NCBI GenBank assembly: GCA_036785375.1
Contig: JAWMAR010000070.1
Location: 4,898,001-4,962,000 of the forward strand
Direction of reading: 5' to 3'
Length of the DNA stretch: 64,000 bases
Source of the DNA: Leucoraja ocellata
Taxonomy: Eukaryota
The number at the start of each line of letters is the position of its first letter. Positions within the stretch are counted from its first letter, which is position 1. Below, piece by piece: positions 363 through 44,501 of this stretch. The notes beneath the pieces are model-generated. The model was not told the origin of the DNA. It searched no databases and saw only the letters and a program-made list of their open reading frames with translations. The position numbers were made by a program, and so were the translations under genes.

Positions 363-686
363 GGTCAAGGGGAATAACTGGACCCGAGGAGGTGAGGGGA
401 GAGTTGGGGCAGTCGGTCACTGTGGAATGTCAGTATGGTCAGGAATACAGTGACTACAAGAAGCTGTGGAGTAAAGGTTATTATTACCGGTCATCTTCTA
501 TCGTGGTTTCTACTGATGACCCACGACGAGGGAGAACATCGATAAGTGATAACAAAACACAACGGATAGTTTCAGTAACCATCGGCAACCTGGAGAAGAG
601 TGATGAAGGACGCTACTGGTGTGCGATTGCAAAGGGAACATTTTCAAGCGATGAAAGGACCTCCATCTCATTGACGGTTTCTGAAG
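363..686 (+). CDS. Gene A (activating-type CD300/pIgR-like receptor): IgV exon
   Basis: ccacag acceptor ends at 362; GAAG|gtacgt donor; 324 nt, phase 1-1. Encodes GQSVTVEC...KLWSKG...GRTSISD...NLEKSDEGRYWC...LTVSE, a CD300/pIgR-type V-set. The leader and probably further Ig exons lie upstream of the window. Confidence 0.9.
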
Positions 687-2004
687 GTACGTTGACGATC
701 TCTCCTCACTCTCCCAGATGTGAACATTCCAGCCTGGGAATTCCCGGCCTCGGTCCTGACGGTGACTCGGTGCCACATCCCCGGGGGTCGGGGTGAAGGA
801 GGGGGGAGCACATTTACTGGGGCCACACCAAGAGCCCACTGTCCCAGGAGCAGTGTGTGTGGGGGGGGGGGGGGTGTGGGGGGGGGGGCTCATCAATGGG
901 GACCGGCGGTTCTGCTGCTGGCGGCTCATTTCCCCAAAGACGATCGCTCCGGGTCCAGAACCTCTGCCGCCCCTCGCTGGAGCAGGGGAACAGCCAGAAC
1001 CTCTGGTGCCCCCTCACCCTCTCCCCCTGCCCGTCACTGTCACACCCACCACGCACACAACATCTGAAGAAGGGTCCCAACCTTAAACATTGTCAGTTCA
1101 TTCCTTCCACGGATGCTGCCTGACCTGCTGAGTTACTCCAGCACTTTGTGTTTTGTTCAAGATTCCAGCACCTGCAATTCCTTGTGTCTCACAAACTTTG
1201 GTGATTGATGAGCTCAGTTTATTGTTGTCGTCTGTACTGAGGTACAGGGAAAAGCTTTTACCATGTTTCCAATGAGGGCCAAGTCATTGGGTATTTTTAA
1301 GATTCACAGGTTCTGAATTAGTACGGGTGTCAAGTGATATGGGGAGAAGGCAGGAGAATGGGGTTGAGAGGGAGAGATAGATCAGCCGTGATTGAAAGGT
1401 GGAATAGACTCAATGGGCCAAATGGCCTCAATCTGCCCCTATCACTTATGAACTAATGAACTAAGAATCCTCAAGAGATGAGTGATATAGACTTTACACT
1501 GAGCCACACAAACTGTACAAGATGAGATACTCAACGGGTCGGGCAGCTTCTGTGGAGAGAGAACGAGAGTTAATGTTTCAGGTAGATACCTCCAACCAAA
1601 TTGCATTATTTCCAATTCAGTCCGCGTAATGAAAATAGTCCATGGATCGTCCCGCTCCCAAGTTCTTCTCCAACATAGAAGACATGTGCCTAACTCTAGC
1701 AGCAGGCAGATAACACAGCCTGTGGGACTCTGAAGGGCATGAAAGAAGTCTCTGAATGCTTGTGACCAACTGGTGGCATCTTAATGGGTGAGCCTCCGGT
1801 CTAGATCAAGAGGCTTGGTCCAACTATGGTGGCCTCAGAAGGATCTTTGCTCAAATGTATGGATTGGGATTTGAATCCAGGAATCTCCCCACACGGAGCA
1901 AGAGCGCTCCTGACTGAGGCATCTCCCACACATCACTAAAGTGGCACAGAACGTGCTTTCAGACATTTAATGTTCAAAAACGTCATTCACTTTATCTCCA
2001 CAAG

Positions 2005-2146
2005 GGTCTCAAACAAGCCGCCCAGACATGGTCACCACCACCTCTGCAACAATAAACAGAAGGGCTCGGACCACCCGGCCTCAAGATGCACCAACCACCC
2101 GGGCGGCAAGTTCCACTGAGTCTCATGGTTCAACACTTCCAAACAG
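2005..2146 (+). CDS. Gene A: Ser/Thr/Pro-rich mucin-like stalk exon
   Basis: ccacaag acceptor, AACAG|gttagt donor; phase 1 in, 2 out. Encodes GSQTSRPDMVTTTSATINRRARTTRPQDAPTTRAASSTESHGSTLPNR; paralogous to 21815-21968. Confidence 0.85.
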
Positions 2147-2706
2147 GTTAGTAACTCGAAGAGCCAACTCAGCCTCACCTGAGAACAAATTAGTTCAGTT
2201 CAATTCAGCTCAGTTTAAAGATACAGCGTGGAAATGGGCCCTTTGGCCCACCGAGTCCGCTCTGAGCAGCGATCACCCCATACACCAGTTCTGTTCTACA
2301 CACTAGGGGCAACTTACTACAAACCCGCACGTCTTTGGAATGTGGGAGGAAACTGGAGAACCCAGAGTAAACTCTTGCGATCACAGGGAGAACGTACAGA
2401 CTCTGCACTGACAGCACCGGTATCAGGATCGACCCCGCATCTACTGTGCTGTGAGGCAGCAACTCTACCGCTGAGCTGACATCTCAATGGGCGAGCCTCA
2501 TGTCTACATCAAGGGGCTTGGTCCATCTATGGTGGCCTAGGAAGGATCCTTGCTCAAATCTCAGGTTTGGGATTCGAACCAAGAATCTCCCCACACAGAG
2601 CAAGATCGCCCCCAACTGAAGCATCTCCCACACGTCACTAAAGTGGCACAGAACGTGATTATAAACATTTAATGTTCAAAGACTTCATTCACTTTATCTT
2701 CACAAG

Positions 2707-2754
2707 GGTCTCAAACATATCACCCAGATATCCTCACCACTTTGGTGCGTGTGT

Positions 2755-2785
<31 letters not shown>

Positions 2786-3200
2786 TTGCACGGTGGCGCA
2801 GCGGTAGAGTTGCTGCCTTACAATGCTTGTAGCGCTGGAGTCCCTGGTTCGATCCCGACTACAGGTGCTGCCTGTACGGGGTTTGTACGTTATCCCCATT
2901 ACCGCATGGGTTTTCTCTGAGATCTTTGATTTCCTCCAACACTCTAAAGACATACAGGTATGTAGGTAGATTGGATTGGCGTATGTGTCAATTGCCCCTA
3001 GTGTGTGTAGCCTAGTGTTAGTGTGAGAATCGATGGTCGGTGTGGACTCCATGGGCCGTCGGTCCTGTTTCCGCGCTATATCTCAAAATTAAACTAAACT
3101 GGATTAAAATATGGTCACCACCACCTCAGGAACCACCACACCCACTCTGCCTCCGGAAGCATCGACCACCAGGGACTCCTGGTTCATCGCCTCGACACAG
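2707..3200 (+). pseudogene. Relic second stalk exon split by a SINE
   Basis: 2477-2745 is a diverged copy of 1777-2045, including the cacaag|ggtctcaaac acceptor. A SINE follows, then 3111-3200 continues as MVTTTSGTTTPTLPPEASTT and ends at cag|gtcagt. Confidence 0.6.
2788..3100 (+). mobile_element. tRNA-derived HE1/V-SINE-type element (representative of dozens of copies)
   Basis: ggtggcgcagcggtagag A-box-like head, ggttcgatccc B-box and (aaact)n tail. Other copies include 2195-2475(-), 12142-12445(-), 12841-13140(+) and 47050-47340(-). Confidence 0.8.
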
Positions 3201-3828
3201 GTCAGTGACTCAAAGTCCCAGAACTTTGAGAAAGCGTGGCTGATCACATTCCAGTCCATTGATAAATACTCCTTGGCCCTGACTAAAGTCCCTCTGTCCT
3301 TAGTACACCCAGTGGCCCTACCATTGTGAATGTCTACCCTTACATGATGCCAAAAACAAATAACTTCACACTTATCACGGTTCAATACCTGCTGGCATTG
3401 CTCTGCCCAACATACCAGTTGCTTCTTATCCCTCTGTGGTCTATGATTATCGTACTATCCAAAATGAGACAATGTTGGTGTAATCTGTAAACTCGTAAAT
3501 CATACTTCCAACATTAACATCTAAGGCCGGCAGATGGGACTAGTGTAGATAAGGACATCTTGGTCGGCGTGGGGGAAATTGGGTCAAAGGACATGTTTTC
3601 ATGCTCTATGTCTGACCATCAACATGAACATCTAAGTTGTTAATGTATGTAGTCATGGAACACCTCCAAGGAATGGGTGCATGTTGCGATATCAACATCT
3701 CACCAATGTCCACGCCAAAACCTTGGATCACACTGAATGATTCCGTGGGCAATATGATGAAAGAAGATTGCCAGCGTTGATCTGTGGTAACTCTGTGTGG
3801 AAGTAATAATATTTCCTTGGATTTCCAG

Positions 3829-3943
3829 GGACACCATGCTGAACATCGTTTGCCGTGTTTGGGGTGTGTTACGCTGGGTACTCTTTGGAATTCTGCTTCT
3901 CTTCCCGGTTTCCATCAGCTGTGTGACAACTTTGAAAAGGTGA
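3829..3943 (+). CDS. Gene A: transmembrane exon with intramembrane Arg and stop codon
   Basis: ttccag acceptor, phase 2 matching the stalk exon. Encodes RDTMLNIVCRVWGVLRWVLFGILLLFPVSISCVTTLKR then TGA (3941-3943). A possible donor AAAAG|gtgaaa overlaps the stop. Confidence 0.8.
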
Positions 3944-4037
3944 AAGTTTGCAATCTCTTCACTCTGGTGTTCACATTAAATTCAACTGGAAATGATGGGA
4001 ATTTACTTTAGAATTGTAGAGATAAAGTGTGGACATA

Positions 4038-4165
4038 CAGCGCCCTCCATAATGTTTGGGACAAAGACATTTATTTATTTGCCTCTGTATTCCACAATTT
4101 GAGATTTGTAATTGAAAAAATCACATGTGGTTAAAGTGCACATGGTCAGATTTTATTAAAGGGTA
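4038..4165 (+). mobile_element. Tc1/mariner-like terminal fragment inside a SINE
   Basis: TA|CAGCGCCCTCCATAATGTTTGGGACAAAGAC resembles a Tc1 TIR start and interrupts a SINE copy. Confidence 0.55.
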
Positions 4166-7100
4166 TACAGCCAATCAAGTCCGTGCCGACCAATGATCAC
4201 CCCGTACACGCGCACTATCCTACACACGAGGGACAATTTACAATTATACAGAGGCCAATTAACCTACAAAACTACACGTCTTTGGATTGTGGTAAGAAAC
4301 CAGAGCACCCGGAGAAAACCCACGCTGTCACAGGCAGAACACACAAACTCCGTACAGACAGCACCCGTAGTCATGATCAAACCCGGGTCTCTGGCGCTGT
4401 AAGGCAGCAACTCTACCGCTGCGCCACTGTGCCGCCCTGGGTCATTTCCTCGGGTAAAATTTGATGGTGGAGATTATAAACTGTGTTTTAATTGTTATTC
4501 AAGGAAAAAAACAGCCAAGACCTTGGAGATGGGGTCGGCAGTGGTGGAGGAAGGAGAGGAACAGCGCCGGTGAGCTGGCTGGGTGAGGCCTCACCTCGCA
4601 TGGAGACGGCCGTGGGAGGCGAGGGGAAAAGGGTGCGTTGGTGGGTCGAGGTGTGGGCGGAGTGCGAGTGGGCTGCTGGAGGGCCCTGCAGCAGCCGGTG
4701 GATCGGGTGCCGCTGGAGGTCACACAGAGGTCGGGGACGAGCGCGCGGATCGGACACGGCCTGCAGCGGCACGGAGCGGTGGTGGAGGCACCGACAACAT
4801 CGCCAGGCCAGGCCGACCCCTGCAACTCCCACCCAGTGCCGTCTCCACGATAATAGGCCTTTAAACCCAAAATAGGACTCTGCTTTTTGACCAATTTGAT
4901 CTTTAAGAATATAAGATACTGCCAGTAATGTGGCAACTCTTGTGTCTGCATCATATAATCTGCTATTAATACTCTTGTTCTTAGCTTCAGCTGTGCTTAT
5001 ATCAAGTAAGATTTTTACTGAATTCTATACAAAAGAAATGTCACTGTACCCATGTGCATGAGACAATAAAGTACCATTGAACCATTGAACAATGGGGATA
5101 TAAAAACGGTTAAATGATTACGTATTGAACTGTGGACACGCGTTAGAAGAATAAGATAAAAATGAAGGGTAATCGTTATATCAATATTGTTATTCTGACA
5201 GAATGACGCCCAATAATCATTGTTTAGCTTTTCAGGGCCAGAGAGGGTGTTCACCAGTTGGAGATGTACAAATCTCATCACCTTGACCCTACAGCATCAT
5301 CACACCCCACCTATGTCCAATCTACCTTGACCACTACGCGAGGAATTTCTTTAGCCAGAGGGTGATGAATCTGTGGAATTAATTGCCACAGTCGGCTGTG
5401 GAGGCCAAGTCAATGGATATTTTTAAATTGGAGATTGACATGTTTACTCAGGGTGACAAAGGTTGTGGGAAGAAGGCAGGAGAATGGGATGGAGGGGGAA
5501 AGATAGATCATCCATGATTGAATGGCGGAGTAGACTTGATGGAGCAAATGGCCGAATTCTGTAACTATGTTTGCAGACACGTCTGTACATCCTGACATTC
5601 ACCCAAAAGACAGCAGAACATAGACTAGAACTCAAAGCTGGCTTTCCAGAATGTGAACTTTTAACTTTACTACCAATTGAATTGCTGTGTGAAACCCTGC
5701 ACATTGAATAATGATTAAAATAATCCAATGTAATAAAAGATGGCTGAATTTTTGTCATAAAGTCATAAGTGATAAGAGTAGAATTAGTTTGGTTTAGAGA
5801 TAGCGCATGGAAACAGGCCCATTGATCCACCGAGTCCATGCCGACCACTGATCACCTGTACACACTATGTTTAAGAAGGAACAGCAGATGCTGGAAAAGC
5901 GAAGGTAGACAAAAACGCTAAGTTTCTCCAGCATTGTTGTCTACCTGTACACACACTAGTTCTGTTATCCCACTTTCTCATTCATTCCCTACACATTTGC
6001 GACAATCTTGCAGAGGTATTTAACCTACAAACTCGCATGGATTAGGGATGTGGGAGGAAGCCGGAGCACCTGGAGGAAACCCATGAGGTCACAGGTAGAA
6101 CATTCAAACTCCACACAGGCAGCACCCGTAGAGAGGATCGAACCCGGGTCTCTGGTGCTGTGAGGCAGCAGCAAACCGCTGCACCACCGTGCCGCCCTGA
6201 AGAGAGAGAGCAGGCTTGTGAGAGCAGACAGCAGAGCAGCAGGCCAGCTAAATGCCTCATCAGAGTGACAGCACCTTCAGCAACTTTAGACACAGTGCTT
6301 AGAACAAATGGAATCAAGGGATATGGGGAGAGAGCAGGAACTGTGTACTGATTTATGTTGATCTGCCACGATCATATTGAATTGCGGTGCTGGTTCGAAT
6401 GGCCGAATGGCCTACTCCAGCGCCTATTTTCTATGTTTCCACATCAGAGCTCCCTCAGTACAACTCTCCCTCCGTGCTCGGCATTCTGGAGTGGGAACTG
6501 AACCAAAATCTCTCTAACTCACTCAATAGTTTTCACCCACTGAGCTTGCACTGCAGGACCCAACACTGGATCTTGGTGTGGCTCGGTTAGCGTGGTAAAG
6601 TCACACAGGACTCCTGCTAGAAACAGCGTGGGAAATGTTGAACCTAGACCACAGGTCACTCATTGAAAAACCATGTGAAACCCAACCCATTCTGAAAGTC
6701 TCAATGACTTCATTTTTGCATTCAAGGAATCTATGGCAACCTCTTTAGTTTAGCCAATTATAGTCACGTGTACCGCGGTGCAGTGAAAAGCTTTTCTGTG
6801 TGTATGCTACCCAGTCAGTGAAAACACTGTATACAATTACAATCGAGCCGTCCACAGGTACAGGATACAGGGAATAATGTTCAATGCAAGATACAGTCTA
6901 GTAAAATCCGATTAAAGATAGTTCCAAGGTCTCGAATGAGGTAGTTGGGAGGTCAGGACCACTCTGAAGGGTCCCATCGAGAAATGTTACCCATCCTTTT
7001 TGTCCAGAGAAGCTGCTTGACCCGCTGAGATGCTCCAACACTTTGTGCCTATCTGTGGTATAAACCAGCATCTGAAGTTCCTTGTTTCTACATTCCGCCC

Positions 7101-9067: not shown

Positions 9068-10836
9068 AAGGTGAATTTATTATGGGGAACAAGGAAATGG
9101 CAGATGAGATGAACAGATACATTGGATCTGTCTTCACTAAGGAGGACACAAACAATCTTCATGATATAGTAGTGGCCAGAGGATCTGGGGGTGACAGAGG
9201 AACTGAAGGAAATCCACAATAGGCAGGAAATGGTATTGGATAGACTGATGGGACTGAAGGCTGCTAAATCCCCAGGGCCTGATGGTCTGCATCCCAGGGT
9301 ACTTAAGGAAGTGACTCTAGAAATCGTGGATGCATTGGTGATAATTTTCTATAGACTCAGGATCCGTTCCTGTGGATTGGAGGGTAGCTAACGTTATCCC
9401 ACTTTTTAAGAAAGGCGGGAGAGAGAAAACGGGGAATTATAGACCAGTTAGCCTGACATCGATGGTGGGGAAGATGCTGGAGTCAATTATAAAAGATGAA
9501 ATAGCCGAACATTTGGATAGCAGTAACAGGATCGGTCCGAGTCAGCATGGATTTATGAAGGGGAAATCATGCTTGCCTTATCTTCTGGAATTTTTTGAAG
9601 ATGTAACTAGGAAAATGGACAAGGGAGAGCCAGTGGATGTAGTGTACCTGGACTATCAGAAAGCGTTTGATAAGGTCCCACATAGGATATTAGTGGGCAA
9701 AATTAGGGCACTTGGTATTGGGGGTTGAGTGCTGACATGGATAGAGAAGTGGTTGGCAGACAGGAAGCAGAGAGTTGGGATTAAATGGTCCCTTTCAGAA
9801 TGGCAGGCAGTGACTAGTGGAGTACCGCAAGGCTCGGTACGGGGACCGCAGCTATTTACAATATGCATCAATGATTTGGATGAAGGGATTGAAAGTAACA
9901 TTAGCAAATTTGCAGATAACACAAAGCTGGGTGGCAGTGTGAACTGTGAGGTGGATGCTATGAGAATGCAGGGTGACTTGGACAGGTTGGAGGAGTGGGC
10001 AGATGCATGGCAGATGAAGTTTAATGCGGATAAATGTTAGGTTATCCACTTTCGTAGCAAAAACAGGAAGGCAGATTACTATCTAAATGGTGTCAAGTTG
10101 GGAAAAGGGGAAGTACAACAGGATCTGAGGGTCCTTGTACATCAGTCTACGAAAGTAAGCATGCTGGTACAGCAGGCATGGAAGAAAGCGAATGGCATGT
10201 TGGCGTTTATAACAAGAGGAATCGAAAATAGGAGGAAAGAGGTCCTTCTGCAGTTGTACAGAGCCCTAGCGAGACCACACCTGGAGTATTGTGTGCAGCT
10301 TTGGTCCCCTAATTTGAGGAAGGACATTCTTGCTATTGAGGGAGTGCAGCGTAGGTTTACAAGGTTAATTCCCGGTATGGCGGGACTGTCATATGCTGAG
10401 AGAATAGAGCAGCTGGGCTTGTACACTCTGGAGTTTAGAAGGTTGAGAGGAGATCACATTGAAACATATGATTGTTAAGGGCTTGGACATGTTAGAGGCA
10501 GGAAACATGTTCCCGATGTTGGGGGAGTCCGGAACCAGGGGCCATAGTTTTAGAATAAGGAGTAAGCCATTTAGAATGGAGACGAGGAAACACATTTTGT
10601 TACAGAGAGTGGTGAGTGTGTAATTCTCTGCAGCAGAGGGCGGTGGAGGCAGGTTCTCTGGATGCTTTCAAGAGAGAGCTAGTTAGGGCTCTTAAACATA
10701 GCGGAGTTAGGGGGTATGGGGAGAAGGCAGGAATGGGTTACTGATTGGGGATGATCAGCCATGATCACATTGAATGGCGGTGCTGGCTCGAGGGGCCGGA
10801 TGGCCTACTCCTGCACCTATTGTCTATTGTCTATTG
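9068..10836 (+). mobile_element. CR1-clade LINE, 5'-truncated, decayed RT
   Basis: KSPGPDG, NYRPVSLTS, YLDYQKAFDKVPH, SGVPQGS, KFADNTK and RPHLEYCVQ motifs with stops; (ctattgt)n tail. Confidence 0.92.
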
Positions 10837-13800: not shown

Positions 13801-14003
13801 GTGCCCGCATTTGGGGGAGGGGCTTGAGGGGGTGGGCAAGGGAATGTTTGCGGTGGTGGACAGAGCGCCAGTCAAGTGGGCAAATGTCACCAGGATGAAG
13901 CAGAGCTTCGAGGAGATGCTCCAATCCAGGCAACTGGAGAGTGTTGTAACCCACTCCTGATAGGGGCATTGTCCGTGGTGAGGAGGCTGGGGGAGGTGAC
14001 AAG

Positions 14004-14144: not shown

Positions 14145-14241
14145 ATGGCGGTGGGACAGGGAGAATTCACCCACCAGAGATGGCCCAGATCCAGGGGAAC
14201 AGTCGCTCTGTTGGTTCTTGTCGCTGTTGTTCTCACATCAG
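14145..14241 (+). CDS. Gene B (inhibitory receptor): leader/signal-peptide exon
   Basis: gacATGG start; MAVGQGEFTHQRWPRSRGTVALLVLVAVVLTS-G with a hydrophobic core; G|gtaaat donor, phase 1, matching the Ig exons. Confidence 0.8.
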
Positions 14242-16786: not shown

Positions 16787-17340
16787 ATATAACCATATAA
16801 CCATATAACAATTACAGCACGGAAACAGGCCATCTCGGCCCTACAAGTCCATGCCGAACAATTTTTTTTCCCCTTAGTCCCACCTGCCTGCACTCGTACC
16901 ATAACCCTCCATTCCCTTCTCATCCATATGCCTATCCAATTTATTTTTAAATGATACCAATGAACCTGCCTCCACCACTTCCACTGGGAGCTCATTCCAC
17001 ACCACCACCACTCTCTGCGTAAAGAAGTTCCCCCTCATATTACCCCTAAACTTCTGTCCCTTAATTCTGAAGTCATGTCCTCTTGTTTGAATCTTCCCTA
17101 TTCTCAAAGGGAAAAGCTTGTCCACATCAACTCTGTCTATCCCTCTCATCATTTTAAAGACCTCTATCAGGTCCCCCCTTAACCTTCTGCGCTCCAGAGA
17201 ATAAAGACCTAACTTATTCAACCTATCTCTGTAACTTAGTTGTTGAAACCCAGGCAACTTTCTAGTAAATCTCCTCTGTACTCTCTCTATTTTGTTGACA
17301 TCCTTCCAATAATTTGGCGACCAAAATTGTACCCCAAAAT
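16787..17340 (-). mobile_element. CR1-clade LINE 3' fragment
   Basis: VQFWSP...LERRRLRGDLIEVFK...FFTQRVV; (ccatataa)n tail. Confidence 0.85.
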
Positions 17341-18070: not shown

Positions 18071-18394
18071 GGTCAAGGGGAAAAACTGAAGTCGAGGAGG
18101 TCTGGGGACAGTTGGGGCAGCGGGTCAAAGTGGAATGTCAGTATGATCGGAAATACAAAGACAACGACAAGCTATGGAGTAAAGGTGATTATTACCAGAA
18201 ATCTTCTATCGTGGTTTCTACTGATGACCCACAACAAGGGAGAACATCGATGACTGATGACAAATCACAACGGATAGTTTCAATCACCATCGACAACCTG
18301 GAGGAGAGTGATGAAGGATACTACTGGTGTGTGATAGTAAAGGGAAACGATTCGCCCATTGAATTGGCCTCCATCTCATTGACGGTTTCTGAAG
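18071..18394 (+). CDS. Gene B: IgV exon D1
   Basis: ccacag acceptor, GAAG|gtaagt donor, 324 nt, phase 1-1. Encodes GQRVKVECQY...KLWSKG...DEGYYWC...LTVSE. Confidence 0.9.
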
Positions 18395-19201: not shown

Positions 19202-19527
19202 GGTCAAGGGGAATAACTGGACCCAAGGAGGTGAGGGAGAGTTGGGGCAGTCGGTCACTGTGGAATGTTGGTATGATCAGAAATACAAAGACAACGACAA
19301 GCGATGGAGTAAAGGTGATTATTACCAGAAATCTTCTACCGTGGTTTCTACTGATCACCCACGACTAGGGAGAACATCGATGACTGATGACAAAAAACAA
19401 CGGATAGTTTCAGTCACCATCAACAACCTGGAGGAGAGTGATGAAGGACTCTACTGGTGTGTGCTGATTGTAAAGGGAAATCATTCGCCCATTGAATCTG
19501 CCTCCATCTCATTGACGGTTTCTGAAG
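19202..19527 (+). pseudogene. Gene B: IgV exon D2 with a 1-nt frameshift (pseudo-exon or assembly error)
   Basis: Splice sites intact, length 326 nt. Reads gtgagggagag where paralogs read gtgaggggagag (one G missing near 19235). The spliced frame reaches TAG near 19366; the Ig frame is open from 19242. Confidence 0.75.
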
Positions 19528-20334: not shown

Positions 20335-20658
20335 GGTCAAGGGGAATAACTGGACCCGAGGAGGTGAGGGGAGAGTTGGGGCAGTCGGTCACAGTGGAAT
20401 GTCCGTATGGTCGGGAATACAGTGACAACGACAAGCGATGGAGTAAAGGTTATTATTACCGGTTTTCTTTTACCGTGGTTTCTACTGATGACCCACAATA
20501 TAGGAGAACATCGATGAGTGATGACAAAACACAACGGATAGTTTCAGTCACCATCAACAACCTGGAGAAGAGTGATGAAGGACTCTACTGGTGTGTGATT
20601 GTAAAGGGAATATTTTCAAGCAATGAAAGGACCTCCATCTCATTGACGGTTTCTGAAG
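20335..20658 (+). CDS. Gene B: IgV exon D3
   Basis: ccacag acceptor, GAAG|gtacgt donor, 324 nt; closest paralog of the gene A exon 363-686. Confidence 0.9.
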
Positions 20659-20769: not shown

Positions 20770-20805
<36 letters not shown>

Positions 20806-21814: not shown

Positions 21815-21968
21815 GATCTCAAACAAGCCGCCCAGACATGGTCAGCACCACCTCTACAACAATAAGCACAAAGGCTTCCACCACAACTCTGACCACCATG
21901 CCTCAAGGTACACCAACCACCAAGGCAGCAAGTTCTACTGAGGCTTCTAGTTCAACACCTCCAAACAG
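21815..21968 (+). CDS. Gene B: mucin-like stalk exon
   Basis: Phase 1 in, 2 out. Encodes GSQTSRPDMVSTTSTTISTKASTTTLTTMPQGTPTTKAASSTEASSSTPPNR. Confidence 0.87.
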
Positions 21969-22561: not shown

Positions 22562-22671
22562 GGGCACATTTCAATGGCAGCTTGTTCTATCGATCGCCTT
22601 GACAATTGTCTTTCTTCTGTTCATCGCTGGCATTATCCTATGTGTAAAAATGAGGCAGAGAAAGAAAACTG
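22562..22671 (+). CDS. Gene B: transmembrane exon (uncharged TM)
   Basis: ttttgcag acceptor, G|gtaagt donor; phase 2 in, 1 out. Encodes RGTFQWQLVLSIALTIVFLLFIAGIILCVKMRQRKKT with a basic stop-transfer cluster. Confidence 0.88.
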
Positions 22672-24327: not shown

Positions 24328-24380
24328 GCTCAAATGGACAGAGAATTATGAGTCAGCAAAATCCAGCAGACAGTTTCAAG
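24328..24380 (+). CDS. Gene B: cytoplasmic exon 1
   Basis: ttttcag acceptor, AAG|gtaagg donor; phase 1 in, 0 out. Encodes GSNGQRIMSQQNPADSFK. Confidence 0.78.
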
Positions 24381-25037: not shown

Positions 25038-25193
25038 GAAACCCCTGTCATTTATACCACCGTGACAACCCGTCCTCCAGCTAGCACGGATAATACTTAC
25101 ATGAACCTTCAGGATCTGAACACACAAGGACAAGCCAAGAGGCAAGGTGCCGCAGAAGTTGTGTACGCAACAATTCTCACTGATAATAATTAA
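25038..25193 (+). CDS. Gene B: terminal ITIM exon
   Basis: Encodes ETPVIYTTVTTRPPASTDNTYMNLQDLNTQGQAKRQGAAEVVYATILTDNN*. ITIM-like VIYTTV and VVYATI plus YMNL; phase 0 matches the previous exon. Confidence 0.85.
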   Translation, partial: ETPVIYTTVTTRPPASTDNTYMNLQDLNTQGQAKRQGAAEVVYATILTDNN

Positions 25194-29142: not shown

Positions 29143-30605
29143 TAGAAACATCAAAACATAGACAATACTTGCAGGAGTAGGCCATTCAGCCCTTTGAGCC
29201 AGCACCGCCATTCAATATGATCAAGGCTGATCATCCAAAAATCAAGTTCAAGGTCACATTTATTGACACATGCACCAATTAATGTGCAGTGATATCAGTA
29301 CCCCGTTTCATCTTTTCCCCCATATCCCTTGATTCCCTTAACCTTAAGAGCTAAATCTAACTCTCTCTTGAATCCACCCTGTGAATTGGCCTCCATTGCC
29401 TTTAGTAGCAGAAAATTCCACAGATTCACAACTCCCTGGGTGAAAAAGATTTCCCTCATCTCTGTCCGAAATGGCCTACCACATTTTTAAACTATAACCC
29501 CTGGTTCTGGACTCCCCCCAACATCGAGAACATTGTTCCTGCATCTCACCTGTCCAATTCTCTAAGAATTGTATATGTTTCTATAGATAACCTCTCATCC
29601 TTCTAACTTCCAGCGAATACAAGCCCAGTCGAACTATTCTTTCATCATATGTCAGTCCCGGCATCCTGGGAATTAACCTGGCGAACATACACTGCATTCA
29701 CTCAATAGCAATAATGTCCTTCCTCAAATTAGGAGTCCAAAACTGGACACAATACTCCAGATGTGGTCTCACCAGGGCCCTGTCCAACTGCAGTAGAACT
29801 TCCTTGCTCCAAAACTCAAATCCTCTCACAATGATGGCAAACATGCCATTGGCTTTCTTCACTGCCTGCTGTACCAGCATGCTTACTTTCAATGACTGAT
29901 GTACAAGCACACCCAGGTCTCATTGCACCTCCCCTTCTCCTAATCTGACACCATTCAGATAATAATCTGCCTTACTGTTCTTGCCACCAAAGTGGTTAAC
30001 CTCACATTTATCTACATTATACTATAACTGCCATGCTTCTGCCCACTAACTCAACCTGTCCAAGTCACCCTGCATCCTCCTCGCAGCTCTCACTGCCACC
30101 CAGCTTTGTGTCATCCGCAAACTTAGTGACGTTACATTTAATTCCCTCGTCTAAATCATTAATATATATTGTAAATAAGTGGGGTCCCAGCACCGAGCCT
30201 TGCAGCACCGCGCTAGTCACTGCCTGCCATTCTGAAAAGAACCTGTTAATTCCTACCCTTAGCTTCCTATCTGCCAACCAGGTCTCTATCCATGTCAATG
30301 CCCTACCCCCAATACCATGTTCTCTAATTTTGCACAATAATCTTTTGTGTGGGACCTTGCCAAAGGCTTTTTGAAAGTCTAGATACTCCACAGCCACTGG
30401 CTCTCCCTTATCCATTCTACTTGTTACATCCTCAAAAAATTCCAAAAGATTAGTCAAGCATGATTTCCCCTTCATAAATCCATGCTGACTTTGACTGATC
30501 CTGACACTGCGTTCCAAATGCGCTGCTATAACATCCTTAATAATCGATTCCAGCATCTTCCCCACTACCGATGTAAGACTAACTGGTCTATAATTCCTCG
30601 TTTTC
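29143..30605 (-). mobile_element. CR1 LINE, decayed RT
   Basis: NYRPVSLTS, YLDFQKAF, QGSVLGP and KFADDTK on the minus strand. Confidence 0.9.
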
Positions 30606-33445: not shown

Positions 33446-33509
33446 ATGGACCTCTCTCTCTCTGTGACCACGATGTTTTATATTCTGCTGTTTCGGACTG
33501 TGACTTCAA
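33446..33509 (+). CDS. Gene C (inhibitory, 2 IgV): leader exon
   Basis: aacATGG start; MDLSLSVTTMFYILLFRTVTS; A|gtaagt donor, phase 1. Confidence 0.8.
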
Positions 33510-34989
33510 GTAAGTTTTTCCACTTTAACCTGAGATGAACAGATTATTGATTAGTACGGGTGTCAGGGGTTATGGGGTGAAGGCAGGAGAATGGAGTTAG
33601 GAGGGAGAGATAGATCAGCCATGATTGAATGGCGGAGTAGACATGATGAGCCGAACAACCTAATTCTGCCCCATTAACTTATGGTCATGGAACCATAGCG
33701 TAGTTATATGTCAACGTGAAGATTAGATCTTGTTATTTAAATCAGTGATGATACACTGCTGCTCAGCCAAAGGACCAGGAGCCGAGAAAGGAACCAACTA
33801 ACTTTACATTTTAGCAAGAGTTAAAATGAACTGTGACAAGAGCACGGGATTTAGCAGAGGATTTAAGAGACGTTCGGACTGGCACATGCATGCAAGAGGA
33901 AAAAGATACAAAGTGCTGGAGTAACTCAGCAGGTCAGGCAGCATCTCTAGAGAACATGGATATGTGATATTTTGAGCCGGGATCCTTCTTCAGACTGATT
34001 GTGGTGGGGGGAGGGGGGTGGGGAGAATGCCCCGCTATCTCAATCAGTTTTTAAGAGTCGTTGGCAGGGGCAGATGGATATGCAGGGAATGGAAAGATAT
34101 GGATGGTGAGCAGGCAGATATGGGTTGGTCGTGGCATCATGTTCAGCATGGCGATTGTGGGCCAAATGGCCTGTTCCTGTGCTGTACTGTTCTATGCTTT
34201 TAGTGAAGATGCAGCACTGAAGATGTTTACGGTACAATCTTTCCTCGGATGCTGTCTTTGTGGAGTTTGTCCCCATCGCCGTATGGGTTTCTTCCGGGTG
34301 CTCGAGTTTCCTTCCACCTCCCATTTCAGGATGAGAGGGACATCGAAACTTAATGAATAGTGAAAGGCCTGGTGATAGAGTGGGTGTGGAGAGGATGTTT
34401 CCACTGGTGGGAGAATCTAGGACCATGGTGCACAGCCTCAGAATAACAGGAAGTTTAGTTTAGTTTGGAGATACAGCGTGGAACCAGGCCCTTCGACCCA
34501 CCGAGTCCACGCTGACCAGCGATCCCTGCACACTAGTTCTATCTGACACACTAGGAACGATTTTTACCGAAGCCAATTAACCTACAAACCTCCACGTTTT
34601 TGGAGTGTGGGAGGAAACCGGAGCGTCTGGAGAAAACCCACGCAGGTCACGGGGAGAACGTGCAAACTCCGTACAGACTGCACACGTACCCGGGTCTCTG
34701 GCGCTGTAAGGCAGCACCTCTACCGCTCCGCTACTGTCTTGCACCTGTTACTGTCCTGTACCTGTTAAGGGGGAGATTCTCATATTCTTGGTGAGCAGTA
34801 CGGGTGTCAGGGGTTATTGGGTTGAGAGGGAGAGATAGATCAACCATTGGGGCAGACAATGAACTGAATGGTCTAAATGTTCTCCTATAACTGAACATGA
34901 GATTATGTCAGGCGGGGGGGGGGGGGGGGGGTATGGGAATATTTTGATGTAATTCTGTAACATTTCCAGCATTAAATTTCACCCGACAG

Positions 34990-35298
34990 GTTCCTTAGCA
35001 AACCTTCCCTTGATGGTGATAAGAGCTGGCGAGGGAAAAACAGTGACTATAGAATGTCCACACGCTCAGAAAACAGGACCTGTCAGCTGGTGCAAAGCCT
35101 ATTCTGGAAAAGGATGCAATGCAATAGTCGACACTGAGAAAGAAGACAGTAGTGGAAGGATATCAATGAGAAGAATCAATGGGTCTGATTTTGTAATAAG
35201 TCAACTTCAGAAGAATGATACAGGAACATACTGGTGTGGAAAAAGTCAGGCAAATAAAATCCATGTTTCAGATATTGTCATGCTGGATGTTTTCACAG
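34990..35298 (+). CDS. Gene C: IgV exon D1
   Basis: gacag acceptor, ACAG|gtaaga donor; 309 nt, phase 1-1. Encodes GKTVTIEC...WCKAYSGKGC...GRISM...DTGTYWC and retains the Cx7C C-C' pair. Confidence 0.9.
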
Positions 35299-36631: not shown

Positions 36632-36946
36632 CAGATTCACGGATACTAAACCGTACCACAGTCAAGGGCGTGAAGGGCAATGCCACCACTATACACTGCC
36701 GGTACAAGGCCCAATTTGAAGCATATGTGAAATTCTTGTGTAAAGTCGTCTCTGTGAATAGTTGCAGCATCATAGCGAGGCCTCATGACTACAACAGCAG
36801 CAAATTGTCAATCAGTGCGGACAAAGTCAACAACTTTGCCATCACGATCAGGCACACTGATGAAGGAGATGTGGGGGAATATTGGTGTGGGGCCAGGACA
36901 CAAGTCGACTTTGAGATCTCACAGGTTCAAACCGTGATGTTTAAAG
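36632..36946 (+). CDS. Gene C: IgV exon D2
   Basis: ttacag(cag) NAGNAG acceptor, AAAG|gtataa donor; 315 nt. Encodes GNATTIHCRY...KFLCKVVSVNSC...DVGEYWCG. Confidence 0.87.
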
Positions 36947-37663: not shown

Positions 37664-38414
37664 GTAAGATTTCTGCAGTCATCCTCAATCTAATCATTAT
37701 TTACTGATTGTTGTTGGTATTGGTTCAATACGTCATGTTTAGTTTAGAGATAGAGTGCGGAAACAGGCCCTTCGGCCCACTGAGTCCGTACGGACCAGCG
37801 ATTTCCGCACACTAAAAGTATCCTAAACATACCAGGGACAAGTTACATTTATACCAAGCCAATATATTTATGCACGACTTTGGAGTGTGGGAGGAAACCG
37901 AAGATCTCGGAGAAAACCCACACGGTCACGGGGAGAACGTACAAACTCCGTACAGGCAGCACCCGTGGTCAGGATCGAACCCGGGTCTCAGGCGCTGCGC
38001 CATTATGCCACCCCGTCTCTTATTCTAAACCAGCACCTGCAGTTCCTCGCATCTCGCTTCCAGTTTCACCCACATTCTAGTTTGTCAACACAAAGAACTG
38101 CAGAAGTTGGTGAATACAGAAAAGAATACAAAGTGCTGGAGTAACTCAACGGGTCAGGCAGCATCGCTGGAGAACATGGATGGGTGACCTTTCAGGTCAA
38201 AACACTTCTTCAGATTCACGTTTCGGGTCGACACCCTTCTTTGATCTGAAGAAAGGTCTCAACCCGAAACATCACCTGTTCCCATTCTCCAGGGATGCTG
38301 CCCTGACCTGCTGAGCTACTCCAGCGCTTTATGTCCTTCCTCATTCTGGTTCAATTTACTGTTAGAGATATTGTTCCTTGTCTCATTGAATGTTTCTCAA
38401 TCGTGTTTTAATAG

Positions 38415-38530
38415 CGGCACCCCACAGATATGGCACATTATACTTCCACTCGTGTTGGGACTATTGGTTGTAATAACGATAGTTCTACTTGTAAAGAAGA
38501 GGAAACAGTCAGAAACTATCCCTCGTGAAA
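38415..38530 (+). CDS. Gene C: transmembrane exon
   Basis: ttttaatag acceptor, A|gtaagt donor. Encodes SGTPQIWHIILPLVLGLLVVITIVLLVKKRKQSETIPRE. Confidence 0.87.
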
Positions 38531-39288
38531 GTAAGTAGCCAACAAAATATTTATGCTACAGTTAAAATGATAATGGAACAATAACTGCGTATGGATTTAT
38601 TATTGGCGTGCAGTGAAAAAATGTTGTTTTGCATGTCACCCAGTCAAATCACACTGAACACGTGTACGTGTAGGAAGGAACTGCAGATGCTGGTTTAAAC
38701 CGAAGATAGACACAAAAAGCTGGAGTAACTCAGCGGGACAGGCAGCATCTCTGGTGAGAAGGAATGGGTGATGTTTCGAGTCGGATGTTTCAACCCATCT
38801 GAAGAAGGGTCTCGACCCAAAACGTCATCCATCCCTGCTCTCCAGAGATGCTGCCTGTCCCGCTGAGTTACTCCAGCTTTTTGTGTCTATCTTCTGTACA
38901 CGAGTACATCAGGTTGTGCATAAAATAATATGATGTTCCAGCGTCGGAGACAATGCAACTAAACATGTCCAAGGACTGCAAAGAGGCGTAAATTGCAATA
39001 AATGTCTGTAAATTATCCCCAGTGTGAGATTTAGTTTAGTTGACATTAGGGATACAGCGTGGAAACAGGCCCTTCGGCCCACTGGGTCTGCACCAACAAG
39101 CCATCCACTTACACTAGCACTATCCTATACAAACTAGGGCCAATTTGCTATTTTGCCAAGCCTATTAACCTACAGAGCTGGAGACGTTTGAAGTTTGGGA
39201 GGAAACCGGAGTTCCCAGAGGAAACCCACGCAGGTCACGGGAAGAATGTATAAACTCCGTACGGACAGCACCCATAGTCAGGATTGAA

Positions 39289-39888: not shown

Positions 39889-39922
39889 GTCAGGATTGAA
39901 CCTGGGTTTCTGGGCTGTGTAA

Positions 39923-42530: not shown

Positions 42531-43151
42531 CAAAAGGATGAGTATAAGAGCAAGGAGGTTCTTCTGCACTTGTACAGGGTCTTGGTGAGACCACACCTGG
42601 ATTATTGCATACAGTTTTGGTCTCCTAATCTGAGGAAATACATTCTTGCCATAGAGTACAGAGAAGGTTCACCAGACTAATTCCTGGGATGTCAGGACTT
42701 TCATATGAAGAAAGACTGGATAGACTTGGCTTGTACTCCGTAGAATTTAGAAGATTGAGGGGGATCTCATAGAAATTTACAAAATTCTTAAGGGATTGGA
42801 CAGGCTAGATGCAGGAAGATTATTCCCGATGTTGGGGAAGTTCAGAAGTAGGGGTCACAGTTTAAAGATAAGGGGGAAGTCTTTTAGGACCGAGATGAGA
42901 AAAACATTTTTCACACAGAGAGTGGTGAATCTGTGGAATTCTCTGCCACAGAAGGTAGTTGAGGCCAGTTCATTTGCTATATTTAAGAGGGAATTAGATG
43001 TGGCCCTTGTGGCTAAAGGGATCAGGGGGCATGGAGAGAAGGCAGGTACAGGATACTGAGTTGTATCAGCCATGATCATATTGAATGGCGGTGCAGGCTC
43101 GAAGGGCCGAATGGCCTACTCCTGCACCTATTTTCTATGTTTCTATGTTTC
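42531..43151 (+). mobile_element. CR1 LINE 3' end
   Basis: RPHLDYCIQFWSP...FFTQRVVNLWNSLP; (ttctatgt)n tail. Confidence 0.85.
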
Positions 43152-43231
43152 CTGTACTGTACAATGTTTTCTGCTACTCGGGGAAATATGAGAACTATTA
43201 TTCTTATTCTAATTTACCTGCTTTTTTGCAG

Positions 43232-43269
43232 ATGGTTGCAAAAACTCAGAAACTCCCGCCACAGCCAAG
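43232..43269 (+). CDS. Gene C: cytoplasmic exon 1
   Basis: ttttttgcag acceptor, AAG|gtaaga donor; phase 1 in, 0 out. Encodes NGCKNSETPATAK; positional equivalent of 24328-24380. Confidence 0.78.
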
Positions 43270-44321
43270 GTAAGAATGTAGAACTGTATGAAACCATTCT
43301 GTATCATTTCTCTTTTCAAATTCTGAACAGGATACATCTCTTCTTTACACGTGTTGAACTGTAGAGGCTGATTTACAGAACAAGACAGACTGCTGGAGTA
43401 GCTCAGCTGGTCAGGCAGCATTTCTGGAGAACATGGATAGGTGACGTTTCAGGTCGGGACCTGTGACTGAAGCAGGGTCCTGACCGATTCACATTCTCCA
43501 GAGATGCTGCCCGACCCGCTGAGTTCATCCAGCACGTTGTGTCCTTTCCTTTAACAAATTACAACGCAATACTGCACTTTGATTCGGTTTCTCTCCCCAC
43601 GTTTGCTGCCTGACCTGTTGAGCATTTCATAGAAACATAAAAAATAGGTGCAGGAGGAGGCCATTCGGCCCTTCGAGCCAGCACCGCCATTCACGGCTGA
43701 TCGTCCCCAATCAATAGCCCGTGCCTGCCTTCTCCCCATATCCCTTCACTCCACTAGCACCTGGAGCTCTATCTAAGTCTCTCTTAAATCCATCCAGTGA
43801 CTTGGCCTCCACTGCCCTCTGTGGCAGGGAATTCCACAAATTCACAACTCTCTGGGTGAAAAAGTTTTTTCTCACCTCAGTCTTAAATGACCTCCCCTTT
43901 ATTCTAAGACTGTGGCCCCTGGTTCTGGACTCGCCCAACATTGGGAACATTTCCTGCAGTTAGTTTATTTGTTTAGAGATACACCGGGGAAACAGGCCCT
44001 TCGGCCCACCGAGCCCGTGCCGACCAGCGATTCCCGCACATTAACACGGCCCTACATACACTAGGGACAATTTTACATTTACACCAAACCAATTAACATA
44101 TAAACCTGTACGTCTTTGGAGTGTGGGAGGAAACCGAAGTTCTCAGGGAAAACCCGCGCGGCTCAACAGGAGAACGTACAAACTCTGTACAGAGGTCGGG
44201 ATTGAACCCGGGTCTCTGGCGCTGTGAGGCAGCAACTCTACCGCTGCGCCACCCTTATTCTCAGATTTCCACAGTATTTTGCTTTTGTACTAAACATCTA
44301 ACTGACTTTTTTTCGTTTCAG

Positions 44322-44501
44322 TCTGAAGGAGAAACTGAAGATACGATTGCATATTCCACCGTGACCATTCAGTCGCCAGCTCAGACCGAAGCAAGCCCTG
44401 CAATTTATTCCAATCTTAAGGATCTAAAAGAGCAAAATGAAGACGTCAAGATCCATTCGGCAGAATCGGTGGAATATTCTGCTCTGGTGTTCCGATCTTA
44501 A
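44322..44501 (+). CDS. Gene C: terminal ITIM exon
   Basis: tttcag acceptor. Encodes SEGETEDTIAYSTVTIQSPAQTEASPAIYSNLKDLKEQNEDVKIHSAESVEYSALVFRS*, with ITIMs IAYSTV and VEYSAL plus YSNL. Confidence 0.88.
   Translation, partial: SEGETEDTIAYSTVTIQSPAQTEASPAIYSNLKDLKEQNEDVKIHSAESVEYSALVFRS

What the first reader, a model, noticed from the sequence alone, without database searches (positions are those of the whole stretch)
363..44501. Activating/inhibitory paired IgV receptor cluster (CD300/pIgR/MDIR-like) in a cartilaginous fish
Seen: three spliced genes with matching exon phases. Gene A has an Arg-bearing TM and no tyrosine tail; genes B and C have neutral TMs and ITIM tails; A and B share closely related IgV and stalk exons. 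Known: this is the architecture of paired receptor families (CD300, LILR/PIR, SIRP, KIR), and skate MDIRs are CD300/pIgR/TREM-like. Inference: A is the activating counterpart of B and binds a similar ligand, possibly a pathogen decoy. Whether this specific locus has been described cannot be judged from the sequence.
Basis: partly seen in the sequence, partly recalled or inferred. Interest (0 to 1): 0.85.

Follow-up and report, generated by a model that had tools for sequence, protein, structure and literature searches.

The report
Skate paired CD300/pIgR-like receptor genes
Three neighbouring immune-receptor genes of a skate, one built to switch cells on and two to switch them off, belong to a receptor family already known from skates and sharks, so the find is real but not new in kind.

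Summary
The + strand carries three genes with CD300/pIgR-type IgV exons, and every exon has AG/GT borders and compatible phases.

- **Gene A** is cut by the window's 5' edge. It has an IgV exon, a stalk, a transmembrane exon with an Arg, and a tyrosine-free tail.
- **Gene B** has a leader at 14145 and three tandem IgV exons, the second with a 1-nt deletion. It also has a neutral TM and a tail with two ITIMs.
- **Gene C** has two IgV exons, not one, plus a neutral TM and an ITIM tail.

A and B are 92-98% identical from the IgV exon's upstream intron to about 310 bp past the stalk exon, and unrelated after that.

The nearest proteins are RefSeq models from Leucoraja erinacea and other skates, rays and sharks, named "polymeric immunoglobulin receptor-like" or "CMRF35-like". 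These include both Arg-TM and ITIM forms. The same Arg-TM motif also occurs in sturgeon and paddlefish proteins.

No RNA evidence could be obtained. Whether these genes are the skate MDIRs described in 2006 could not be tested by sequence.

Unchecked earlier notes of this scan report many similar clusters within about 1 Mb upstream in the same genome. Verdict: a real paired-receptor cluster and a new member of a known kind.

The parts
363..686 (+). Gene A, IgV exon (phase 1 to 1); the membrane-proximal domain type, the same type as B IgV3
   Evidence: AG/GTACGT borders and no stop. Pfam V-set 9.4e-14. 297/324 nt identical to 20335-20658. Groups with B3-type domains in the domain tree.
2005..2146 (+). 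Gene A, Ser/Thr/Pro-rich stalk exon (phase 1 to 2)
   Evidence: AG/GTTAGT borders. tblastn to the P0002, P0155 and P0157 stalks gives 62-63% over 63 columns. 120/140 nt identical to B's stalk exon.
3829..3939 (+). Gene A, transmembrane exon with Arg (phase 2 to 2). The donor GTGAAA is weak; if it is not used, translation stops at TGA 3941-3943
   Evidence: 83.7% over 43 columns to Leucoraja erinacea XP_055510911.1 (P0002), with an identical 28-residue core. The motif recurs in 17 of 236 fetched proteins.
4504..4573 (+). Gene A, last exon: 22 codons without Tyr, then TGA
   Evidence: Preceded by AG. tblastn to the C-terminus of P0002 gives 79.3% over 29 columns.
14145..14241 (+). Gene B, leader exon (ATG, phase 0 to 1)
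   Evidence: 91.4% over 35 residues to the leader of P0002. Donor GTAAAT.
18071..18394 (+). Gene B, IgV exon 1 (distal domain type)
19202..19527 (+). Gene B, IgV exon 2: 326 nt, with a 1-nt deletion in a G run and a 3-nt insertion. Six stops if read in phase. Either a pseudo-exon, a skipped exon or an assembly error
   Evidence: Alignment of the four IgV exons, per-exon table. The part after the deletion is an intact V-set domain, 5.7e-13.
20335..20658 (+). Gene B, IgV exon 3 (proximal type, the partner of A's IgV)
21815..21968 (+). Gene B, stalk exon (phase 1 to 2)
   Evidence: 85.7% over 63 columns to P0155. AG/GTTAGT borders.
22562..22671 (+). Gene B, uncharged transmembrane exon (phase 2 to 1)
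   Evidence: Hydropathy 3.04. 86.8% over 38 residues to P0155. AG/GTAAGT borders.
24328..24380 (+). Gene B, small cytoplasmic exon (phase 1 to 0)
   Evidence: 89.5% over 19 residues to P0155. AG/GTAAGG borders.
25038..25193 (+). Gene B, last exon with VIYTTV, TYMNL and VVYATI, then the stop
   Evidence: 52/52 residues identical to the C-terminus of P0155..
33473..33509 (+). Gene C, tentative leader exon (12 codons plus 1 nt)
   Evidence: The only candidate with a GTAAGT donor in phase 1. Its last base gives Ser, as in the leaders of P0244, P0245 and P0190. The resemblance was judged by eye and is tentative.
34990..35298 (+). Gene C, IgV exon a (four Cys)
   Evidence: Pfam V-set 3.1e-09. 48.1% over 108 columns to Narcine P0190. 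AG/GTAAGA borders. Cys at 22, 34, 42 and 82.
36632..36946 (+). Gene C, IgV exon b (four Cys); the donor GTATAA is weak
   Evidence: Pfam V-set 25.4 bits against a cut-off of 26.
38366..38530 (+). Gene C, short stalk plus uncharged transmembrane exon (phase 1 to 1). The acceptor was chosen by phase and is tentative
   Evidence: Hydropathy 2.81. The TM is 43.6% identical to P0164 over 39 residues, which is weak on its own (E 19), and resembles Pristis P0244..
43232..43269 (+). Gene C, small cytoplasmic exon (phase 1 to 0)
   Evidence: Found by a phase-aware AG...GT scan, where it was the 6th row of the 15 printed. Strong pyrimidine tract and GTAAGA donor. ...ETPATAK resembles ...ETPATTK at the same place in Pristis P0244.
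44322..44501 (+). Gene C, last exon with IAYSTV, AIYSNL and VEYSAL, then the stop
   Evidence: 53-64% identical to shark and ray C-termini..

Best explanation
The region holds three members of the elasmobranch CD300/pIgR-like receptor family. This is most likely the family published from clearnose skate as MDIR.

Gene A encodes an activating-type receptor. It has one or more IgV domains and a mucin-like stalk. Its transmembrane helix carries an Arg near the outer side, and its cytoplasmic tail is short and has no tyrosine. By inference, the Arg pairs with an acidic residue of an ITAM-bearing adaptor, of the FcR-gamma/CD3-zeta or DAP12 kind, so that ligand binding activates the cell.

Genes B and C encode inhibitory-type receptors with uncharged helices and tails carrying two ITIMs. 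By inference, these are phosphorylated and recruit SHP-type phosphatases.

A and B are a pair. A recent duplication or gene conversion gave A the same membrane-proximal IgV exon, intron and stalk exon as B, while each kept its own signalling exons.

Shown here: the exons, their phases, the domain family, the A/B identity, and the conservation of both signalling modules in other cartilaginous fishes. Inferred: expression, splicing, adaptor, phosphatase and ligand.
For: - Exon table with AG/GT borders and compatible phases.
- V-set domains, with pIgR and CD300 as the best solved relatives.
- Arg-TM and a Tyr-free tail in A; ITIMs in B and C.
- A/B nucleotide identity: 98.3% in the upstream intron, 91.7% in the IgV exon, 96.7% in the intron, 85.7% in the stalk exon. 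Similarity ends about 310 bp after the stalk exon, and A's TM and tail exons have no other copy in the window.
- RefSeq relatives have the same two designs. Leucoraja erinacea P0002 has three IgV domains, the same Arg-TM core and the same tail. P0155 has three IgV domains and an ITIM tail 52/52 identical to B's.
- The Arg-TM motif is found in 17 of 236 fetched proteins from skates, rays, sharks, sturgeon and paddlefish, attached to both ectodomain types.
- In the ray Hemitrygon, the activating and inhibitory models have near-identical domains, with branch lengths of 0.02.
- The IgV exon diverged more than its introns: 27/324 against 6/359, Fisher p 4.8e-05, and against all four aligned intron segments p 0.0014. 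dN/dS is 1.65 to 3.3.
Against: - No transcript evidence. The three runs guessed to be RNA gave zero depth on A's IgV exon, and the one contig over the TM exon is unspliced and about 93% alike.
- A's 5' end is outside the window, so it cannot be shown to be intact.
- A's TM-exon donor (GTGAAA) and C's IgVb donor (GTATAA) are weak.
- B's second IgV exon is frame-shifted.
- dN/dS above 1 is significant only for B1 against B3 (p 0.03). A against B3 gives p 0.47.
- Excess divergence in the exon could also come from patchy conversion by other paralogues.
- No adaptor gene was looked for or found. The one findings search for one was blank.
- Akula et al. 2014 reported no FcR gamma chain in shark data (passages).
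Confidence: 0.7

Rival explanations
1. Gene A is a dead or partial duplicate rather than a working activating receptor. It would be a B-like ectodomain cassette dropped in front of an old Arg-TM exon.
For: - A's 5' end is not in the window.
- There is no RNA support.
- The TM donor is weak.
- Just downstream of A's stalk exon lies a second, SINE-interrupted stalk-exon copy. Window 1774-2038 matches 2477-2740 at 85%, with a SINE-like repeat at 2788-3100.
- Its neighbour B has a frame-shifted exon.
Against: - All four A exons seen are open, with AG/GT borders and compatible phases.
- The TM and tail are 79-84% identical, with an identical 28-residue core, to a Leucoraja erinacea RefSeq model with the same exon order.
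- The TM motif is conserved across cartilaginous fishes and sturgeons.
Confidence: 0.15
2. These are true pIgR orthologues, that is, immunoglobulin transport receptors as the RefSeq names suggest, and not signalling paired receptors.
For: - pIgR chains are the best solved-structure matches for all three domain types.
- Relatives are named 'polymeric immunoglobulin receptor-like'.
- The ectodomains have several IgV domains.
Against: - The high pIgR scores are sums over five domains. The single best stretch has E 5.3e-09, while one-domain CLM-1 reaches 2.6e-19.
- The tails are ITIM-type or Arg-TM-type.
- The RefSeq names are automatic.
- A/B-type domains lack the second Cys pair of pIgR/CD300 domains.
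- I recall that the pIgR tail carries sorting signals rather than ITIMs. This was not tested here.
Confidence: 0.07
3. Gene B is a pseudogene because of the frameshift in IgV exon 2. In that case A has no working inhibitory partner in this window.
For: A 1-nt deletion in a G run gives 6 in-phase stops, while the exon keeps good splice sites.
Against: - It is the only defect in an otherwise intact exon (V-set 5.7e-13 after the shift).
- A homopolymer length error in the assembly, or skipping of a symmetrical-phase exon, would leave B intact.
- All other B exons are open, and the tail is 52/52 identical to a RefSeq protein.
Confidence: 0.25

Closest known systems
RefSeq models of Leucoraja erinacea: XP_055510911.1 (P0002, 'polymeric immunoglobulin receptor-like') and the isoform X2 protein P0155
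   Same: P0002 has three IgV domains, a stalk, the same Arg-TM core and the same Tyr-free tail as gene A. P0155 has three IgV domains, a neutral TM and an ITIM tail 52/52 identical to gene B's last exon.
   Different: The IgV domains are only 59-79% identical to the window's, and the stalks 62-86%. They are therefore paralogues, or orthologues from another species or assembly. They are automatic predictions without a published description that I could find.
Modular domain immune-type receptors (MDIR) of clearnose skate, Cannon et al. 2006 Immunogenetics 58:362
   Same: [quoted passage not shown] From my recollection of the abstract, they have one to six Ig domains, with one form carrying a charged TM residue and others carrying ITIMs.
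   Different: No MDIR sequence could be obtained. None of my three protein searches returned a protein with that name, and the paper is not held. Identity with MDIR1-5 is therefore untested. I recall that the paper called the domains I- or C2-set, whereas Pfam calls these V-set.
Mammalian CD300 (CMRF35-like) family
   Same: It has a single V-type domain of the same subfamily: CLM-1/CD300LF E 2.6e-19, CMRF35-H 2.7e-09. It has a stalk, activating members with a charged TM and inhibitory members with ITIMs, and the genes are clustered. The activating/inhibitory split of the CD300 genes is recalled, not tested here.
   Different: The skate A/B-type genes stack up to three or more near-identical IgV exons. 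A/B-type domains lack the extra Cys pair. The charged residue is an Arg near the outer end of the helix, within a motif not seen in the one rodent CMRF35-like protein I looked at (P0041).
Polymeric immunoglobulin receptor (pIgR)
   Same: It is the best-scoring solved relative for all three domain types, it has several IgV domains in a row, and C-type domains keep four Cys.
   Different: The skate genes signal through an Arg-TM or ITIM tail. No specific D1/D5 correspondence was seen for gene C's two domains. Akula et al. 2014 reported no PIGR homologue in shark data (passages).
Macaque activating KIR
   Same: A recombination joined a ligand-binding ectodomain of one gene to the Arg-bearing TM and tail region of another, and the Arg-TM receptors use FcR gamma. 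This comes from the abstract start of PMC8102735, seen in a search listing.
   Different: It is an unrelated Ig domain type (C2) in a mammalian lineage, so it is an analogy for the mechanism only.

Membership tests
CD300/pIgR-type V-set receptor superfamily | The ectodomain is a V-set Ig domain whose closest relatives are pIgR and CD300 domains | tested here: met
   Pfam V-set passes for 5 of the 6 IgV exons; the sixth scores 25.4 bits against a cut-off of 26. pIgR and CD300 chains head all three solved-structure searches, 10 or more orders of magnitude ahead of antibody V domains for A and for C IgVb.
CD300/pIgR-type V-set receptor superfamily | A second Cys pair in addition to the canonical B-F disulfide (that this is typical of the family is recalled) | tested here: inconclusive
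   Gene C domains have four Cys: 22/34/42/82 and 22/36/44/85. Gene A and B3 domains have only 22 and 86. The alignment shows Ser where pIgR D5 has Cys. Shark relatives of the A/B type still have the Cys (for example P0063).
Paired activating/inhibitory receptors | Neighbouring genes have near-identical ectodomain exons but different signalling exons | tested here: met
   92-98% nucleotide identity over 2.4 kb, ending after the stalk exon. The TM and tail exons are unrelated.
Paired activating/inhibitory receptors | The activating member has a basic residue in the TM and a short tail without signalling tyrosines | tested here: met
   Arg in the helix and 0 Tyr in the TM and tail exons.
Paired activating/inhibitory receptors | The inhibitory member has an ITIM ([SIVL]xYxx[ILV]) | tested here: met
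   B has VIYTTV and VVYATI. C has IAYSTV and VEYSAL. Both are conserved in sharks and rays.
Paired activating/inhibitory receptors | Association with an ITAM adaptor and with SHP phosphatases; opposite effects on cells | not testable with these tools
   This needs biochemistry.
Paired activating/inhibitory receptors | Both genes are expressed and spliced as modelled | tested here: inconclusive
   Contigs of three runs guessed to be RNA gave zero depth on 401-1000 and no exon-exon joint. One unspliced contig lies at 3749-4040. The runs are small, of unknown tissue, and partly from another organism label.
MDIR (clearnose skate) | Sequence identity with MDIR1-5 | not testable with these tools
   No MDIR sequence was reachable. 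Nothing named MDIR appeared among the 29, 64 and 3 hits listed. The paper is not held.
MDIR (clearnose skate) | A skate multigene family of activating/inhibitory receptors with CD300/pIgR-like domains in variable number | tested here: met
   The nearest proteins are from skates. Domain number varies from one to three in this window, and up to five domain hits were found in relatives. The family description comes from passages of PMC3031540.
pIgR proper | A tail for transcytosis and binding of polymeric Ig (recalled definition) | tested here: not met
   The tails are ITIM-type or short after an Arg-TM. Ig binding was not testable.

The most novel reading that the evidence does not exclude
The window is the edge of a very large skate receptor complex; unchecked notes place similar clusters up to about 1 Mb upstream. 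In it, one ancient signalling module is repeatedly recombined with fast-evolving IgV cassettes of at least two ectodomain types. The module is an Arg-bearing helix with the motif W-x-x-[LFT]-R-W-[ILVP]-[LIVF]-[FLS] and a later S/C-rich stretch. It is shared with sharks, rays, sturgeon and paddlefish, and so predates the split of cartilaginous and bony fishes. This would make it the ancestral activating arm of the CD300/pIgR lineage, with an adaptor partner that is still unidentified in cartilaginous fishes. The excess of exon over intron divergence would reflect an arms race with ligands.
Probability: 0.4. Interest if true: 0.55.

Novelty: new member of a known kind. Interest (0 to 1): 0.33.

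Why it matters
The locus gives a clean genomic example from a cartilaginous fish of how an activating receptor and an inhibitory receptor come to share an ectodomain. The exchanged block has sharp borders, and a discarded older stalk exon lies behind it.

It also shows that the activating transmembrane module is much older than the ectodomains attached to it.

This bears on the origin of the CD300, pIgR and related receptors. One survey reported these as absent from sharks (PMC4016189, passages).

The family itself is already published from a skate, close relatives are already in RefSeq, and function remains inferred. It therefore adds detail rather than a new kind of system.

Tried and rejected
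**RNA evidence.** The look-up of sequencing runs listed no holder on record as RNA. Read laying on window 1-6000 with X1, X8, X9 (guessed RNA) and X2 (DNA) gave only repeat-derived depth and joints. Depth on 401-1000 was zero in the three guessed-RNA runs, and no exon junction appeared. This neither supports nor refutes the splice model.

**MDIR membership.**
- The 2006 paper and a 2010 review are not held.
- Paper searches found only PMC3031540 mentioning MDIR. One search was badly posed and returned skateboarding papers.
- Three protein searches returned nothing named MDIR. One search found only 3 proteins and no skate C-type protein, which shows how limited the word index is for this family.

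**Gene C details.**
- A separate stalk exon between IgVb and the TM exon was scanned for and not found. I settled on a direct, phase-compatible splice to 38366, which is tentative.
- The Narcine protein resembles the read-through after 36946, so another donor is possible.
- A first leader candidate for C at 31479 was rejected because two of its possible donors give phase 0 and the phase-1 one is a weak GTGCAG.

**Other tests.**
- A D1/D5-type correspondence of gene C's two domains with pIgR was not seen.
- A search of earlier notes for an ITAM adaptor was blank.
- TREM relatedness was rejected because no chain of that name was listed.

I did not fold any protein. I did not ask for supplements of papers (they are closed), and they might list shark CD300/pIgR-like genes.

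Full report
**What is there.**
The window has no N runs and is rich in SINE-like and LINE fragments. tblastn with the open frame at 353-796 found related IgV-like exons at 362-697, 18070-18402, 19201-19535 (in two frames), 20334-20669 and, more distantly, 36661-36891. Homologous proteins later showed a sixth at 34990-35298.

Pfam calls five of the six V-set. The E-values are 9.4e-14, 1.5e-15 and 8.7e-14, and 5.7e-13 and 3.1e-09. The sixth, at 36632-36946, scores 25.4 bits against a cut-off of 26.

A hydropathy scan found three transmembrane candidates on the + strand that sit downstream of IgV exons. They are at 3791-3940 (with an Arg), 22437-22682 and 38245-38535. A motif scan found ITIM-like tyrosines in open frames at 24948-25190 and 44097-44498.

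**Gene models.**
I built the models from splice signals, phases and tblastn of database proteins. I checked each exon on its own.

- Gene A: 363-686, 2005-2146, 3829-3939, 4504-4573.
- Gene B: 14145-14241, 18071-18394, 19202-19527, 20335-20658, 21815-21968, 22562-22671, 24328-24380, 25038-25193.
- Gene C: 33473-33509 (tentative), 34990-35298, 36632-36946, 38366-38530, 43232-43269, 44322-44501.

Every internal border is AG...GT and the phases fit. Three borders are weak or chosen only by phase:
- A's donor GTGAAA at 3940.
- C's donor GTATAA at 36947.
- C's acceptor before 38366.

Either way the tail has no tyrosine.

Bases 1-362 are 98.3% identical to the intron upstream of B's third IgV exon. 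Gene A therefore begins before the window and may have more IgV exons.

**The defect in gene B.**
Aligned with the other three A/B-type IgV exons, B's second IgV exon has one base missing in a G run. It also has a 3-nt insertion that occurs in a Leucoraja protein as well. Read in phase it has six stops. After the deletion it is an intact V-set domain.

**Family.**
Against solved structures, the gene A domain matches as follows:
- pIgR: E 1.7e-30 over five stretches, with the best single stretch on domain 5 at 5.3e-09.
- A fish pIgR: 8.6e-23.
- CLM-1/CD300LF: 2.6e-19.
- Other CD300 chains: down to 2.7e-09.
- The first unrelated V domain: 5.9e-07.

Gene C's two domains give the same order. No chain named TREM is among the rows listed in any of the three.

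A scan of 1.84 billion representatives found 2081 proteins at E 0.001 or better, and 67 at 1e-30 or better. The ones I looked up are RefSeq models from Leucoraja erinacea, Narcine, Hemitrygon, Pristis, Heterodontus, Scyliorhinus, Mustelus, Heptranchias and Carcharodon. They are named 'polymeric immunoglobulin receptor-like', 'CMRF35-like molecule' or 'uncharacterized'. Further ones come from Rhinoraja and Amblyraja.

**Closest relatives.**
Leucoraja erinacea XP_055510911.1 (P0002) has three IgV domains, a stalk, a helix whose 28-residue core is identical to gene A's, and a 22-residue Tyr-free tail that differs from A's last exon at one residue. That model splices the helix exon to the tail exon as I propose for A.

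The Leucoraja isoform X2 protein P0155 has three IgV domains. Its last 52 residues are identical to B's last exon. Its small cytoplasmic exon is 89.5% identical to B's, its helix 86.8% and its stalk 85.7%, but its IgV domains are only 59-79% identical. The window is therefore from a skate close to, or the same as, L. erinacea, but these are not the same genes.

Gene C is the skate counterpart of two-domain ITIM receptors of sharks and rays. Domain identities are 35-48% and tail identities 53-64%. Its small exon ends ...ETPATAK, where Pristis has ...ETPATTK.

**The pair.**
A and B are alike from the window's first base to 2457: 94.8% over 1-806 and 92.5% over 1007-2457. The likeness ends about 310 bp after the stalk exon, inside a SINE-like repeat. 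A's helix and tail exons have no other copy in the window.

Piece by piece, the identities are:

| Segment | Identity |
|---|---|
| Upstream intron | 353/359 |
| IgV exon | 297/324 |
| Next 120 intron bases | 111/120 |
| Next 996 aligned intron bases | 963/996 |
| Stalk exon | 120/140 |
| Downstream intron | 286/309 |

The IgV exon is significantly more diverged than the upstream intron (p 4.8e-05), than the long intron (p 5.6e-04) and than the four aligned intron segments together (p 0.0014).

dN/dS is 1.65 for A against B3, 2.31 for A against B1 and 3.32 for B1 against B3. Only the last is significant on its own (p 0.47, 0.065 and 0.030).

The 19 amino-acid differences between A and B3 all lie between positions 23 and 96 of 107. 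The first 22 and last 11 residues are identical. This fits diversifying selection on the exposed loops. It fits patchy conversion from other paralogues equally well, and I did not separate the two.

**Domain tree.**
I made a maximum-likelihood tree of 34 domain rows: four window pieces plus domains cut from 12 relatives. Domain hits covering fewer than 80 profile positions were dropped and not counted.

The tree separates two skate domain types. B1 and B2 fall in one (support 100/98). A and B3 fall in the other, together with the second or third domains of the Leucoraja and Amblyraja proteins (support 80/92, drawn open).

In Hemitrygon, the activating and inhibitory models have almost identical domains, with branch lengths of about 0.02 and supports of 99/93 and 100/96. 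The pairing is therefore not peculiar to this window.

**The activating module.**
A pattern built on A's helix matched 17 of the 236 proteins fetched by then. These include skate, ray and shark models with A/B-type ectodomains, and shark and ray models with C-type ectodomains (P0149, P0177; P0245 was seen later). They also include two Acipenser proteins. A paddlefish protein, P0238, has the same helix and was fetched after that count.

In paddlefish, RefSeq lists an ITIM-tailed protein and an Arg-helix protein as isoforms of one gene. The signalling module is thus old and is moved between ectodomains.

Which adaptor it uses is inference. The Arg sits near the outer end of the helix. From memory, and from the abstract start of PMC8102735 on macaque KIR (listing), I associate that position with FcR-gamma-type partners. 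Akula et al. 2014 reported no FcR gamma chain and no PIGR in shark data (passages).

**Expression.**
No listed run is on record as RNA. On window 1-6000, three small runs guessed to be RNA gave depth only on repeats. They gave zero depth on 401-1000 and no exon-exon joint. One 295-base contig of X1 lies unspliced across 3749-4040, with 18 other letters and 4 gaps. The DNA run X2 covers the region with about 1% differences.

**What is known.**
PMC3031540 (passages) cites Cannon et al. 2006. [quoted passage not shown] I recall the abstract of the 2006 paper but could not read it and could not get MDIR sequences.

Six library searches found no paper on this locus or on shark CD300/pIgR-like clusters beyond these. 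The library lacks most subscription journals, and supplements were closed.

Earlier, unchecked notes of this scan describe many similar paired clusters 69 kb to 990 kb upstream on the same piece, and on another piece. This window is therefore one sample of a large complex that the scan has already met.

**Verdict.**
The genes are new members of a known kind.

Noticed in passing
window 2477-3202: A second, broken copy of A's stalk exon. Window 1774-2038 matches 2477-2740 at 85%, including the exon's acceptor and first codons (tblastn 2679-2741). A SINE-like repeat follows at 2788-3100. Then an open stretch at 3111-3201 resembles the rest of a stalk exon and ends at a donor like the real one. 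It looks like the older stalk exon left behind when the B-like block was placed in front of it.
   Followed up: partly
window 62226-62507, minus strand: An open frame with a 36-residue match to the NAD-binding domain of S-adenosylhomocysteine hydrolase (Pfam PF00670, E 1.5e-10). It is probably one exon of an AHCY or AHCY-like gene, or a fragment of one.
   Followed up: partly
window 13799-13957: A 53-residue open stretch about 190 bp upstream of gene B's start codon is 70% identical to the C-terminus of a two-helix, apparently chimeric Rhinoraja RefSeq model (P0153). It has no Pfam match. It may be a conserved upstream region wrongly taken as coding in that model.
   Followed up: partly
window 9191-10600 (+), 30065-30676 (-), 16874-17347 (-): Fragments of LINE reverse transcriptase. 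RVT_1 scores 4.9e-14 for 9372-9728 and 1.8e-24 for 30068-30676. The 16877-17347 piece has no Pfam hit but resembles the ORF at 10098-10478.
   Followed up: partly
window, e.g. 2204-2476, 12141-12441, 28248-28525, 34452-34737, 43960-44253, 47048-47341: A SINE-like repeat of about 270-300 bp is present in more than 20 copies on both strands at 65-80% identity. The A/B similarity block ends inside one of them.
   Followed up: no
proteins P0037 and P0238 (Polyodon spathula), fetched: RefSeq lists an ITIM-tailed form and an Arg-helix form as isoforms of one paddlefish gene. This would mean activating and inhibitory receptors made by alternative splicing rather than by separate genes.
   Followed up: no
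window 17861-20784: The three IgV exons of gene B sit in a tandem repeat of about 1.13 kb, comprising exon plus intron. Window 17861-19634 matches 18992-20765 at 92.9%.
   Followed up: partly
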